Of a stretch of 64,000 nucleotides of DNA, positions 59,860 through 62,170 are shown piece after piece. Below the pieces are notes generated by a model, which worked only from the letters and a program-made list of their open reading frames with translations, had not been told where the DNA came from and did no database searches. Both the position numbers and the translations under genes were made by a program. Source of the DNA: Asterias rubens (taxonomy: Eukaryota); assembly GCF_902459465.1 (NCBI RefSeq), contig NC_047067.1, positions 20,646,001 through 20,710,000 on the forward strand. Reading direction: 5' to 3'. The stretch's first letter is position 1. Each line of letters opens with the position of its first letter.

Positions 59860-62170
59860 GTCTCCAACTTTTCTGAAGCTGGATTCGATCCCGGGACCCT
59901 CCGGTCCAGAGACCAGAGCCCCTCCACTGGGCCACTGCTCCTTCTTACTAATAATGCGTTCGAGTTTTATTTTAAACCTTCGTATGACAAACTTTTAATT
60001 AAAACTTAGTAAAAGAACACTCGGGAATCGAACTCCGCACCATTGGGTGTAGAGTCCGGAGCCCTTCCATTGAGCCACGTCTCCTCTTACTTCATTTGCG
60101 TTCGAGTTTAATTTTAAACCTTCGTATGACAAACTTTTAATTAAAACGTAGTAAAAGAACACCCGGGAATCGAACTCCGCACCATTGGGTGTAGAGTCCG
60201 GAGCCCTTCCATTGAGCCACGTCTCCTCTTACTTTTATGGCGTTCGAGTTTAATTTTAAACCTTGGTATGAACAACTATAAATCAAAACGTAGTAAAAGA
60301 ACACCCGGGAATCGAACTCCGTACCATTGGGTGTAGAGTCGGGAGCCCTTCCATTGGGCCACTACTACTCTTACTTCATTTGCGTTCGAGTTTAATGTTA
60401 TACCTTAGAATGAACAACTTTAAATCAAAACGTATTATAGCTTATGCCTTCCACTCGCAAATTATTTATTAAGTGTAAAGCAAGGATTTCCCTATGCCAT
60501 AGGGTACCGCGCAAACCAATGTTCTCAAGCATACTAAAAGAACACAGATCGGGAATCGAACCCCGTACCATTGGGTGTAGAGCCCGGAGCCCTTCCATTA
60601 GGCCACTACTACTCTTACTTCATTTGCGTTCGAGTTTAATGTTATACCCTAGAATGAACAATTTTAAATCAAAACGTACTATTTGCCTCCCACTCGCAAA
60701 TTATTTACCAAGTGTAAAGCAAGGATTTCCCTATACCATAGGGTACCGCGCAAACCAATGTTCTCAAGCATACTAAAAGAACACAGATCGGGAATCGAAC
60801 CCCGTACCATTGGGTGTAGAGCCCGGAGCCCTTCCATTGGGCCACTACTACTCTTACTTCATTTGCGTTCGAGTTTAATGTTATACCCTAGAATGAACAA
60901 TTTTAAATCAAAACGTACTATTTGCCTCCCACTCGCAAATTATTTACCAAGTGTAAAGCAAGGATTTCCCTATACCATAGGGAACCGCGCAAACCAATGT
61001 TCTCAAGCGTAGAAAAAGAACAGAGACCGGGGTTCGAACCCTGTACCATTGGGTGTAGAGCCCGGAGCCCTTCCATTGGGCCACTACTACTCTTTCTTCA
61101 TTTGCGTTCGAGTTTAATGTTATACCTTGAATGAACAATTTTAAATCAAAACGTATTATAGCTTATGCCTTCCACTCGCAAATTATTTATTAAGTGTAAA
61201 GCAAGGATTTCCCTATGCCATAGGGTACCGCGCAAACCAATGTTCTCAAGCATACTAAAAGAACACAGATCGGGAATCGAACCCCGTACCATTGGGTGTA
61301 GAGCCCGGAGCCCTTCCATTAGGCCACTACTACTCTTACTTCATTTGCGTTCGAGTTTAATGTTATACCCTAGAATGAACAATTTTAAATGAAAACGTAT
61401 TATTTGCCTCCCACTCGCAAATGATTTACCAAGTGTAAAGCAAGGATTTCCCTCTACCATAGGGAACCGCGCAAACCAATGTTCTCAAGCGTAGAAAAAG
61501 AACACAGACCGGGGTTCGAACCCTGCACCATTGGGTGTAGAGCCCGGAGCCCTTCCATTGGGCCACTACTACTCTTACTTCATTTGCGTTCGAGTTTAAT
61601 TGTATACCCTAGAGTGAACAACTTCATATCAAAACATATTGTAACTTATGCCTTCCACTCGCATTAATTATTGATTAGGGGTTAAGCAAGGATTTCCCTA
61701 TGCCGTAGGGTACCGCGTAAACCAATGTTCTTCAACGCAGAAAAAGAACACACACCGGGGTTCGAACCCAGCACCTTTGGCTTCAGAGTCCAGAGCCCTA
61801 CCACTGTGCCACTGTCCTTCTTCATAACAAAAGGTTCGAGTTTAAATATAAACCTTAGAATGAATTCAACTTTAAATCAAAACGTAATAGCGGGTGCCTT
61901 CCACTCGCATGTTATTTATTAGGTATAAAGCAAGGATTTCCCTATGCCATAGGGTTCCGCTTAAACCAATGTTCTTACGCGTAGAAAAAGACACACGCCG
62001 TGGCTCGAACTCAGTACCTTTGCGCTCAGAATCCGGAGCTCTACCACTGGGCCACCGCTCTTCTCATGAACAATGGGTTCGAGTTTAATTATAAACCTTA
62101 GAGTGGACAACTTTAAATCAAAACGTATATAGCGAGTGCCTTCCACTCGCGTGTTTTACAAGGATTTCCC
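59860..62170 (-). repeat. Tandem array of tRNA-like cassettes: 142-bp units followed by ~239-246-bp units
   Basis: The aaaaga(a)cac anchor recurs at 60011, 60153, 60295, 60536, 60775, 61014, 61257, 61496, 61742 and 61986; a diverged copy lies at ~59865. Confidence 0.95.
61741..61820 (-). pseudogene. tRNA-Gln(CTG)-like cassette, clearest of 11 copies; not a canonical tRNA
   Basis: Minus strand: TGGCACAGTGG A box, CTCTGGACTCTGAA (as in the Gln-CTG anticodon arm), GGTTCGAACCC B box, then TTTTT. Acceptor and anticodon stems are imperfect. Confidence 0.65.

What the first reader, a model, noticed from the sequence alone, without database searches (positions are those of the whole stretch)
59860..62075. 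Tandem array of 11 tRNA-like Pol III cassettes, 8 with an amber (CTA) anticodon
Seen on the minus strand of a typical unit: an AT-rich element ~30 nt upstream, an A box (TGGCCCAATGG), a paired D-stem (GCCC/GGGC), an anticodon loop with U33, a B box (GGTTCGATTCC or GGTTCGAACCC) and, in ten copies, TTTT about 10 nt after the T-arm. The three edge copies read CTG, one with the Gln-type arm CTCTGGACTCTGAA. The eight homogenised central copies read CTA (e.g. 60578-60580), one transition from CTG, which would pair with UAG. Acceptor and anticodon stems are mismatched and position 37 is C, so these are unlikely to be working suppressors. Inference: promoter and terminator are kept while the cloverleaf decays, pointing to ~80-nt tRNA-like ncRNAs or tRF sources, or to a TFIIIC/Pol III platform.
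Basis: partly seen in the sequence, partly recalled or inferred. Interest (0 to 1): 0.7.

Follow-up and report, generated by a model that had tools for sequence, protein, structure and literature searches.

The report
Decayed tRNA-like repeats inside giant palindrome
This is a tandem repeat built from worn-out tRNA-like gene copies, sitting in one arm of a large mirror-image repeat that occurs dozens of times in a marine (sea-star-like) genome. The "amber" anticodon is one old mutation copied many times, not a set of working suppressor tRNAs.

Summary
Eleven tRNA-like units lie on the minus strand of window 59870-62061. Eight read CTCTACA (CTA) in the anticodon loop and three read CTG. All keep an upstream TATA-like block and an A box. 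Ten end in a T-run, and the six CTA units of 239-244-bp period have a consensus B box.

None is a tRNA. ARAGORN finds none, Rfam scores are 17-23 bits (threshold 29; real tRNAs here score 37-74), the acceptor and anticodon stems are broken, and no cloverleaf folds.

The array is not a local oddity. It is a satellite with at least 392 CTA-type units and at least 652 promoter-plus-A-box units genome-wide. It forms a fixed part of a non-coding module of about 7 kb, present at least 51 times. This module often occurs as mirror pairs around a 323-bp satellite. Here that gives a palindrome of about 29 kb, whose centre lies beyond the window end.

The CTA triplet is one mutation spread by amplification. 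Related arrays read CCA, GTA, CTG or CTT.

Evidence for promoter constraint is mixed. The A box and an upstream block are slow-evolving among old unit types. The B box is not, and recent variants show no significant signal.

Verdict: a tRNA-derived satellite, a new member of a known kind.

The parts
59870..62061 (-). Whole array of 11 tRNA-like units (8 CTA-type, 3 CTG-type)
   Evidence: Periods are 239-244 bp (inner units) and 142 bp (outer units).
61983..62061 (-). Innermost unit: loop TTCTGAG (CTG), B box with two mismatches, T5 run
   Evidence: The same unit type sits at the same place in copies B-D (78% identity to the central unit).
61740..61818 (-). Second unit: loop CTCTGAA (CTG), arm CTCTGGACTCTGAA. 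It has the best tRNA score of the array.
   Evidence: Rfam tRNA 23.4 bits against a gathering score of 29.
60534..61572 (-). Five homogenised CTA-type units of 239-244-bp period. Their tRNA-like parts lie at 61494-61572, 61255-61333, 61012-61090, 60773-60851 and 60534-60612. They alternate between two subtypes (B box GGTTCGAACCC or GGTTCGATTCC), which gives a 482-bp higher-order repeat.
   Evidence: Rfam scores of 19.6 and 17.2 bits for two of them.
60009..60368 (-). Three CTA-type units at 142-bp spacing, lacking the 97-bp insert (60293-60368, 60151-60226, 60009-60084). B box with G52A, 3-nt shorter trailer.
59870..59941 (-). Outermost unit: loop CTCTGGA (CTG), shortened T arm, no T-run. This type occurs exactly once per arm module.
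   Evidence: A pattern for this unit type gives 51 genome hits against 0 in the control. Rfam 16.9 bits.
60676..60772 (-). Example of the 97-bp 'S' insert that turns the 142-bp unit into the 239-bp unit. It holds a small hairpin, CCCTATGG(C/T)ATAGGG.
   Evidence: It is related to the 94-bp repeats at 58896-59489.
60628..60643 (-). Example of the upstream promoter-like block (TATA-like plus TTAAACTCGAAC) at -37..-22 of a unit. AAACTCGAAC is invariant in all 11 units.
   Evidence: The motif followed by an A box 18-26 nt later occurs 652 times against 0 in the control.
58896..59489 (-). 94-97-bp repeats related to the S insert, outside the array
   Evidence: period 94 at 59290-59467; matches to unit positions 105-175.
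59600..59810 (+). G+C-rich stretch containing GGTTCGAACCCC on the plus strand. By eye it looks like a tRNA-related SINE, but it behaves as a fixed part of the arm module.
   Evidence: The own-genome search found it only once per arm (88 candidate places). No Rfam hit.
56339..63500 (.). Arm module shared by all copies of the family (non-coding)
   Evidence: No ORF of 120 aa or more and no Pfam hit on the ORFs.
50994..56338 (.). Locus-specific outer part of the palindrome arm. It is single-copy DNA present only here and in its mirror copy.
   Evidence: 52747-56338 has only two full-length hits in the genome, itself and its mirror copy (96%).
63501..64000 (+). Start of the central 323-bp satellite. 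The palindrome centre lies at about 65480, beyond the window end.
   Evidence: At least 435 matching 323-bp units, always on the inner side of arms.
49957..50456 (.). Run of 500 N next to the outer end of the palindrome (left as it is)

Best explanation
The array is a tRNA-derived satellite.

Origin (inferred): a 142-bp unit was amplified head to tail. It consisted of a Pol III-type tRNA-like gene with its own upstream TATA-like/TTAAACTCGAAC block, A box, B box and T-run. A 97-bp insert then created the 239-244-bp unit. Two subtypes of that unit form a 482-bp higher-order repeat.

State of the units (shown): they have lost the acceptor and anticodon stems and cannot make a tRNA.

The CTA triplet (inferred from the distribution): it is a single substitution that was carried along when that unit was amplified and homogenised by unequal exchange and gene conversion.

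Context (shown): the array is a fixed component of a non-coding module of about 7 kb. From outside to inside the module holds S repeats, a G+C-rich piece, the tRNA-like array and an inner spacer, followed by a 323-bp satellite. The module is present at least 51 times, mostly in multi-megabase zones of four chromosome-scale contigs. It often occurs as two mirror-image arms around the 323-bp satellite. In this window it is the left arm of a palindrome of about 29 kb, whose two arms are kept 99% alike.

Activity (inferred, not shown): the intact promoter-like layout means the units may still recruit TFIIIC or Pol III. Nothing here shows that they do.
For: Not tRNAs:
- ARAGORN finds 0 genes.
- Only four units reach Rfam E<=10, at 16.9-23.4 bits against a threshold of 29. 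57 genuine tRNAs of this genome score 36.7-73.9 bits.
- The stem tables show broken acceptor and anticodon stems.
- Minimum-energy folds are not cloverleaves, with z-scores from -0.03 to -0.93.

Satellite family:
- At least 577 full-unit matches from 40 of 173 candidate places, on nine contigs.
- 392 CTA-type words against 1 in the control.
- 652 motif-plus-A-box sites against 0 in the control.

The triplet drifts:
- Among 83 units the loops are CTCTACA 57, CTCTGAA 11, CTCTTCA 8, CTCAACA 4, CTATACA 2 and TTCTGAA 1.
- Related 142-150-bp arrays read CTCCATA, CTCTAGA, CTCTATA, CTGTATA or CTCTGGA.
- No unit of the GGAGCAG type has a complementary 3' acceptor strand at the canonical distance (0 hits).

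Module and palindrome:
- Mirror arrays with the same order of unit types occur in four fetched copies.
- The arms of this copy are 93-99% alike from window 50994 to 80359 on the extended scale.
- The outermost unit type occurs 51 times, with at least 11 minus/plus pairs 9-15 kb apart.
- The two arms of one palindrome are 99.5-100% alike, against 94.8-98.2% between palindromes.
- The 323-bp satellite always lies on the inner side.
- No coding potential was found.
Against: - The A box/D arm and the upstream block are clearly slower-evolving than the acceptor, anticodon-arm and trailer regions among old unit types. A+B+upstream has 11/38 variable sites against 62/97 (p=0.0005), though the choice of regions was partly post hoc.
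- In 83 recent units, box variation sits mostly at the two free positions of each box (pi 0.37-0.42 against 0.01-0.05 at specified positions).
- All 83 units keep a run of at least 4 T.

These three points fit some constraint on Pol III promoter function, past or present.

- Contigs from four metatranscriptome runs of one study hold 10-38% of the array's sampled words. This could be transcripts, or DNA carried over into the libraries.
- The outer limits of the module and the way it spreads are not resolved.
Confidence: 0.75

Rival explanations
1. The units are live Pol III loci. Arrays of TFIIIC/Pol III binding sites, with or without stable tRNA-like RNAs of about 75 nt, would act as chromatin boundaries or organisers on both sides of the central 323-bp satellite. 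tRNA genes and B-box arrays do this at fission-yeast centromeres and the mating-type inverted repeats.
For: - The layout of a type-2 Pol III gene is complete: a TATA-like block at about -30, an A box, a B box and a T-run right after the T arm.
- The A box and upstream block are conserved among old unit types.
- Box variation is concentrated at free positions.
- A T-run is present in 83/83 units.
- The arrays are placed symmetrically on both sides of a satellite core.
- RNA-library contigs hold parts of the array.
- tDNA barrier function is known to need TFIIIC and Pol III and to be orientation-independent (PMC2040200). B-box boundaries occur at the IR-L/IR-R repeats (PMC7474672).
Against: - There is no occupancy or transcript evidence.
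- The B box is no better conserved than the rest among old unit types, and the outer units carry B-box mismatches.
- Recent variants show no significant depletion at box sites.
- Unit numbers vary freely between arms, from 2 to 25, as expected for a neutral satellite.
- The tRNA-like part is slightly more diverse than the spacer (pi 0.092 against 0.079).
Confidence: 0.15
2. The arrays are the internal tandem repeats of the long inverted arms of a non-autonomous foldback-type transposon, like Tetris in Drosophila virilis. The family spread by transposition, and longer arrays are satellite expansions born inside the element.
For: - The arms are long and inverted, with internal tandem repeats whose number differs between arms and between copies.
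- There are dozens of dispersed copies with one architecture.
- In most copies the arm continues outward into a 677-bp piece that contains a widespread MITE-like element of about 386 bp. This parallels Tetris, which shares its arm ends with the MITE DAIBAM (PMC4079207).
- No transposase is present, so any such element would be non-autonomous.
Against: - No defined termini or target-site duplications were found.
- In this copy the palindrome runs on for 5.3 kb into single-copy DNA. In copy C, and in about 22 other arms, it runs on into yet another dispersed repeat.
- Solo arms are as common as mirror pairs.
- Copies cluster in a few multi-megabase zones rather than being scattered. This fits segmental duplication plus local inversion-duplication as well.
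Confidence: 0.3
3. The eight CTA units are working, or weakly working, amber suppressor tRNAs.
For: A CTA triplet sits at the anticodon position, preceded by U33, in a unit with Pol III promoter-like boxes and a terminator.
Against: - The acceptor stem has 1-2 Watson-Crick pairs of 7 and the anticodon stem has 1-3 of 5. Position 37 is C. No cloverleaf folds.
- The units are below threshold in both detectors.
- The same triplet position drifts to CTT, CAA, CCA and GTA in sister units.
- At least 392 copies in a repeat context argue against a dosage-sensitive suppressor.
Confidence: 0.01
4. The palindrome (not the array itself) is an assembly artefact of long-read chimeras.
For: - A 500-N gap lies just outside the left arm.
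- Palindromic reads are a known artefact (my own knowledge).
Against: - The arms are 93-99% alike, not 100% identical, and they differ in unit number.
- At least 11 loci share the architecture with different array lengths.
- Arms cluster by locus.
Confidence: 0.03

Closest known systems
tRNA- and SINE-derived satellite DNAs (for example the SINE-derived satellites of squamate reptiles, PMC10702118)
   Same: Both are tandem arrays whose monomer descends from a Pol III tRNA-related element. Copy number is moderate, arrays sit at many loci, they cluster towards particular chromosome regions, and they show concerted evolution.
   Different: Here the monomer looks like a tRNA-type gene with its own 5' flank and a T-run directly after the tRNA-like part. 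It is not a piece of a SINE body. The arrays are also fixed parts of a larger, often palindromic module.
Tandem tRNA gene clusters in heterochromatin (Arabidopsis SYY cluster, PMC12308677 and PMC2886086)
   Same: Both are head-to-tail amplified tRNA gene units with their promoters, sitting in repeat-rich DNA. This genome also has genuine tandem tRNA arrays, for example on C12 and C13.
   Different: SYY units encode functional tRNAs that are expressed in specific cells. The units here fail every tRNA test.
Foldback transposons with internally repetitive arms (Drosophila FB, Galileo, Tetris; PMC4079207, PMC3573991)
   Same: Both have long inverted arms that carry tandem repeats of about 220-240 bp in variable number, and both are non-coding and dispersed. 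The arm ends are linked to a MITE family, and larger satellite-like arrays grow from the internal repeats.
   Different: No termini or target-site duplications were found. The arms are far longer (7-14 kb), the centre is itself a satellite, and the palindrome extends into single-copy DNA at this locus.
tDNA and B-box boundary elements of fission yeast (centromere imr tDNAs, IR-L/IR-R; PMC2040200, PMC7474672)
   Same: Pol III-type elements are placed in mirror symmetry on both sides of a central domain, inside inverted repeats.
   Different: This is a functional analogy only. No binding or barrier data exist here. There are dozens of copies on a few chromosomes, so these are not centromere cores as far as can be told.
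Amber suppressor tRNAs
   Same: A CUA triplet at the anticodon position.
   Different: The rest of the tRNA is missing, so these are not members of that class.

Membership tests
Functional nuclear tRNA gene | Covariance-model score at or above the Rfam RF00005 gathering score | tested here: not met
   The best unit scores 23.4 bits, and three others score 16.9-19.6, against a threshold of 29. Seven units do not reach E<=10. The whole-window gathering search gave 0 hits. Real tRNAs of this genome score 36.7-73.9 bits.
Functional nuclear tRNA gene | Cloverleaf with a 7-bp acceptor stem and a 5-bp anticodon stem | tested here: not met
   In the fixed register used for all units, the acceptor has 0-2 Watson-Crick pairs plus 0-3 G-U pairs of 7, and the anticodon stem has at most 3 standard pairs of 5. 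Only the D stem is intact. Minimum-energy folds are not cloverleaves. ARAGORN finds none at default settings.
Amber suppressor tRNA | CUA anticodon in an otherwise functional tRNA body, with a purine at position 37 | tested here: not met
   CTA is present in 8 units, but the body is not functional and position 37 is C. The triplet drifts in sister units.
Pol III type-2 transcription unit | A box (TRGCNNAGTGG-like) and B box (GGTTCGANNCC) at tRNA spacing, with a T-run of at least 4 downstream | tested here: met
   All 11 units have the A-box core. The six CTA units of 239-244-bp period and the second unit have a consensus B box, and the other four units have 1-2 mismatches. Ten of 11 have T4-5. 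Among 83 family units, 79 have a consensus B box and 83 have a run of at least 4 T. This is a sequence-level test only.
Pol III type-2 transcription unit | Occupancy by TFIIIC or Pol III, or a transcript of unit size | not testable with these tools
The only evidence is the share of words held in RNA-library contigs.
Satellite DNA | Head-to-tail monomers in arrays at several loci, with higher-order structure and homogenisation | tested here: met
   Tandem Repeats Finder reports periods of 239 and 482. There are at least 577 unit matches on nine contigs. Central units are 93-100% alike, while fixed edge units are 77-82% alike.
SINE | tRNA-derived head followed by a body and tail transcribed as one unit, dispersed as single copies | tested here: not met
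   A T4-5 run directly follows the tRNA-like part and would stop Pol III before the rest of the monomer. All copies seen lie in arrays inside the module.
Foldback transposon | Long inverted arms with internal tandem repeats, dispersed in many copies | tested here: met
Foldback transposon | Common termini flanked by target-site duplications in unrelated DNA | tested here: inconclusive
   Shared sequence ends at window 56339 in this copy only. Other copies continue into a 677-bp piece and beyond it. Here the palindrome continues into single-copy DNA.

The most novel reading that the evidence does not exclude
The mirror-image arrays of tRNA-like units are kept as multi-site TFIIIC/Pol III platforms. 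They would bracket a central satellite in dozens of giant palindromes and act as chromatin boundaries or nuclear-organisation anchors. This would be an animal counterpart of the tDNA and B-box barriers in the inverted repeats of fission-yeast centromeres and the mating-type region. It would also explain why the upstream block, the A box and the terminator outlast the cloverleaf.
Probability: 0.1. Interest if true: 0.7.

Novelty: new member of a known kind. Interest (0 to 1): 0.35.

Why it matters
The finding removes a tempting misreading: a cluster of amber suppressor tRNAs in an animal genome. What is really there is a clear example of how a Pol III gene unit turns into satellite DNA, and how that satellite travels as part of a larger palindromic module.

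For annotation, several hundred such units should be flagged as tRNA-derived repeats, not as tRNA genes or pseudogene clusters of local origin.

If the units still bind TFIIIC or Pol III, the family would give a natural, many-copy system for studying Pol III-based chromatin boundaries in an animal.

The palindromes, with arm-to-arm homogenisation and locus-specific extension, are also useful material for studying how large inverted duplications form and persist.

Tried and rejected
- **Read evidence.** The look-up of sequencing runs gave RNA and DNA holders. One pattern search built from other letters returned a match whose printed text reaches into those places. Local alignments in scripts used the stored loci as they were.
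- **Fetching more copies.** The module ends, target-site duplications and related arrays elsewhere could therefore not be read as loci.
- **Parent tRNA.** The Gln-type arm completed to a stem (CTCTGGACTCTGAANCCAG) has 0 matches in the genome, so a tRNA-Gln parent is not shown. The related arrays' loop CTCCATA and T loop recall tRNA-Trp. That comparison is from memory only and is a lead, not a test.
- **Acceptor complement.** A 3' acceptor complement for the GGAGCAG-type units at the canonical spacing gave 0 hits. It exists only at the shortened spacing of the once-per-arm unit.
- **Other RNA families.** Only weak chance-level hits were found: Histone3 stem-loop at 19.4 bits against 34, plus RgsA and HYMAI.
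- **Coding potential of the arm.** No ORF of 120 aa or more was found, and nine ORFs gave no Pfam hit.
- **SINE reading of 59600-59810.** It is not dispersed and occurs once per arm.
- **The upstream motif as a general tRNA promoter element.** Motif sites on C1 and C2 do not coincide with the genuine tRNA hits there. The reversed-pattern control for the bare 12-mer was uninformative, because it hits another repeat.
- **Literature.** Searches found analogues but no description of this family.
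Full report
**1. The observation**

The minus strand of window 59862-62150 holds eleven units. Each begins with GTGGC, which corresponds to tRNA positions 7-11. Tandem Repeats Finder reports three periods: 239 bp (7.6 copies), 482 bp (a two-unit higher-order repeat) and 142 bp (3.7 copies).

I parsed the units in tRNA register.
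- Eight units have the loop CTCTACA: U33, CTA at positions 34-36, C37.
- The innermost two and the outermost one read TTCTGAG, CTCTGAA and CTCTGGA (CTG).
- The D stem is intact.
- The A-box core TGGC..A.TGG is present in all eleven.
- The B box is at consensus in the six CTA units of 239-244-bp period and in the second unit. It has 1-2 mismatches in the other four.
- Ten units carry T4-5 a few bases after the T arm.
- A TATA-like stretch followed by TTAAACTCGAAC lies at about -37 to -22.

**2. The units are not tRNAs**

- ARAGORN finds nothing in the window. It calls a few units only when its threshold is lowered to 70-90%.
- Rfam finds no family at gathering score in the 64 kb.
- With a permissive search, four units reach 16.9-23.4 bits against the tRNA threshold of 29. 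The other seven do not reach E=10.
- The same model finds 57 genuine tRNAs elsewhere in this genome, at 36.7-73.9 bits.
- In the CTA units the acceptor stem has one or two Watson-Crick pairs of seven, and the anticodon stem has one to three pairs of five.
- Predicted folds are not cloverleaves and are no more stable than shuffled sequence, with z-scores from -0.03 to -0.93.

**3. The array belongs to a genome-wide family**

The window is C6:20646001-20710000 of a 417.6-Mb assembly.
- The 239-bp unit has at least 577 matches from only 40 of 173 candidate places. The matches lie on nine contigs.
- The CTA-type word CTCTACACCCAATGG occurs 392 times, against 1 for the control.
- The upstream motif followed by an A box 18-26 nt later occurs 652 times, against 0 for the control.
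- Those 652 sites include further arrays of 142-150-bp period on C2 (6.2-7.7 Mb). The related pattern shows such arrays also on C9 and C16. Their units share the 5' half GGAGCAGTGGCCCAGTGG, a B box and a T-run. At the anticodon position they read CTCCATA (CCA), CTCTAGA or CTCTATA (CTA), CTGTATA (GTA) or CTCTGGA (CTG).
- None of these units has a 3' strand complementary to GGAGCAG at the canonical distance.
- Among 83 full units from seven arrays, the loops are CTCTACA 57, CTCTGAA 11, CTCTTCA 8, CTCAACA 4, CTATACA 2 and TTCTGAA 1.

The 'amber' triplet is therefore one state of a freely drifting position. It is multiplied by tandem amplification and does not represent eight independent events.

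**4. Context: a dispersed module, often a giant palindrome**

Arrays come in minus/plus pairs about 8-10 kb apart. I fetched four such loci, and all show the same mirror-image order:
- S-type repeats;
- three to four 142-bp units;
- a variable number of 239-244-bp units;
- two diverged inner units;
- a spacer;
- then a 323-bp satellite in the centre.

In this copy the inverted arms run from window 50994 to about 63490, and from about 67445 to 80359 on the extended scale. They are 93-99% identical, and the centre lies near 65480, outside the window.

The part shared with other copies starts at window 56339. Further out, this copy's arms consist of DNA found nowhere else in the genome except in its own mirror image, at 96% identity. 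In most other copies the arm continues into a 677-bp piece containing a widespread MITE-like element of about 386 bp. Beyond that piece it continues into another dispersed repeat.

The outermost unit type occurs exactly once per arm. A pattern for it gives 51 hits (22 plus strand, 29 minus strand). Most lie on C6 (20), C16 (12) and C15 (11). At least 11 are minus/plus pairs, and the rest are solo arms.

The 323-bp satellite has at least 435 matching units and always lies on the inner side of arms. A long one-directional array on C2, with about 25 units, sits in the same arm context.

The two arms of one palindrome are 99.5-100% alike. Different palindromes differ by 2-5%, and arms cluster by locus in a tree. 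This points either to arm-to-arm gene conversion or to local mirror duplication after the copies diverged.

The arm has no ORF of 120 aa or more, and its ORFs have no Pfam match.

**5. Is the promoter under constraint?**

There are two levels of evidence.

Recent variation (83 units):
- Mean diversity of the tRNA-like part is 0.092, against 0.079 for the rest.
- The A and B boxes taken whole are not less diverse than random windows.
- Sites that the box consensus specifies have lower diversity (0.028 against 0.083, resampling P about 0.025). The two free positions of each box are among the most variable sites.
- By count of variable sites, however, the difference is not significant: 6/18 against 110/221, p=0.22.
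- The variants are few and inherited, so this test has little power.

Old divergence (five unit types of this array):

| Region | Variable sites | p against the rest |
|---|---|---|
| A box | 2/11 | 0.02 |
| Upstream block, -37 to -22 | 4/16 | 0.016 |
| B box | 5/11 | 0.75 |
| 5' acceptor strand | 6/7 | not tested separately |
| -21 to -7 | 12/15 | not tested separately |
| Trailer | 13/15 | not tested separately |

The upstream block was chosen after I had seen the alignment, so its p-value is partly post hoc.

By inspection of the printed matches, the related arrays differ mostly in the anticodon arm. That search required the 5' half and the T-run, so those parts are conserved by ascertainment.

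Reading: the A box and an upstream element were, or still are, better kept than the cloverleaf. The evidence is suggestive, not decisive.

**6. Expression**

Contigs of four metatranscriptome runs from one study hold 10-38% of the array's sampled 31-mers. DNA runs under three organism labels hold 36-67%. With hundreds of genomic copies, DNA carry-over cannot be excluded.

I worked beside those places afterwards.

**7. Mechanism**

The best-supported reading is a tRNA-derived satellite.

- Shown: the unit anatomy, the failure of all tRNA tests, the family size, the fixed place of the array in the module, the mirror arrangement and the arm homogenisation.
- Inferred: a Pol III tRNA-type gene unit with its own flanks was amplified in tandem. 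It acquired a 97-bp insert related to other repeats of the same arm and decayed as a tRNA. It was then homogenised, and it spread as part of a larger non-coding module.
- Inferred: the origin of the unit from a real tRNA gene, amplification by unequal exchange, and the way the module spreads. The last could be foldback-type transposition or segmental duplication with local inversion-duplication.
- Open: whether TFIIIC or Pol III still use the units.

**8. Comparison with known systems**

The closest known kinds are the following.
- SINE- and tRNA-derived satellites (PMC10702118).
- Tandem tDNA clusters in heterochromatin (PMC12308677).
- Foldback elements whose arms carry internal repeats of about 220 bp that seed satellites, such as Tetris (PMC4079207).

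As a functional analogy only, tDNA and B-box barriers in the inverted repeats of fission yeast are the nearest system (PMC2040200, PMC7474672).

I found no paper describing this family.

Earlier notes of this scan list another array of the same kind on another piece of this genome (s1-172725). They also call the genome sea-star-like (s1-150290). My own guess of the species rests on memory of the assembly size and is not verified.

**9. Verdict**

The 'promoter outlasts cloverleaf' idea is partly supported at sequence level and untested at RNA or chromatin level. The real entity is a satellite that forms part of a dispersed palindromic module: a new member of a known kind, of moderate interest.

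Noticed in passing
window 50994-64000 and beyond (C6:20696994-20726359): A palindrome of about 29 kb. Its inner 7 kb per arm is a dispersed family module. Its outer 5.3 kb per arm is single-copy DNA found only in the two arms (96% alike). This points to a local inverted duplication that took flanking DNA along.
   Followed up: partly
window 63501-64000; L011:7501-10000, L015: A 323-bp satellite fills the centre of each palindrome and switches orientation inside the array. The switch is near one end in this copy and near the middle in copy B. There are at least 435 units genome-wide, always on the inner side of arm modules.
   Followed up: partly
L012:40-716 (C6:19256040-19256716): A 677-bp piece at the outer end of most arms. 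It has internal inverted similarity (77%) and contains an element of about 386 bp that is spread over nearly all large contigs (8486 first-look candidates). It looks like a MITE family.
   Followed up: partly
G000 C2:6.23-7.70 Mb, C9:0.80 and 1.39 Mb, C16:9.52 Mb: Other large arrays of 142-150-bp tRNA-like units. They have the same upstream motif and 5' half but different triplets at the anticodon position (CCA, GTA, CTA, CTG). They form a superfamily of acceptor-less Pol III-type tandem units.
   Followed up: partly
G000 C12:17.87-17.91 Mb and C13:8.536-8.550 Mb: Genuine tRNA genes (56-74 bits) stand in tandem clusters, with neighbours mostly 300-600 bp apart. Tandem amplification of real tRNA genes is therefore common in this genome.
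   Followed up: no
window 46076-49837 (+): Long ORFs rich in Pro, Ser and Gln, with a stretch that recalls a tensin/PTEN-type C2 region. This is probably the 3' exons of an animal gene, ending about 1 kb from the palindrome. The resemblance is by eye only.
   Followed up: no
window 49957-50456: A run of 500 N directly outside the left end of the palindrome. I left it as it is.
   Followed up: no
window 62746-62792 (+): A weak match to the histone 3' stem-loop model (19.4 bits against a gathering score of 34), inside the arm spacer. Probably chance.
   Followed up: no
window 59815-59861: An AT-rich stretch between the outermost unit and the G+C-rich piece.
   Followed up: no
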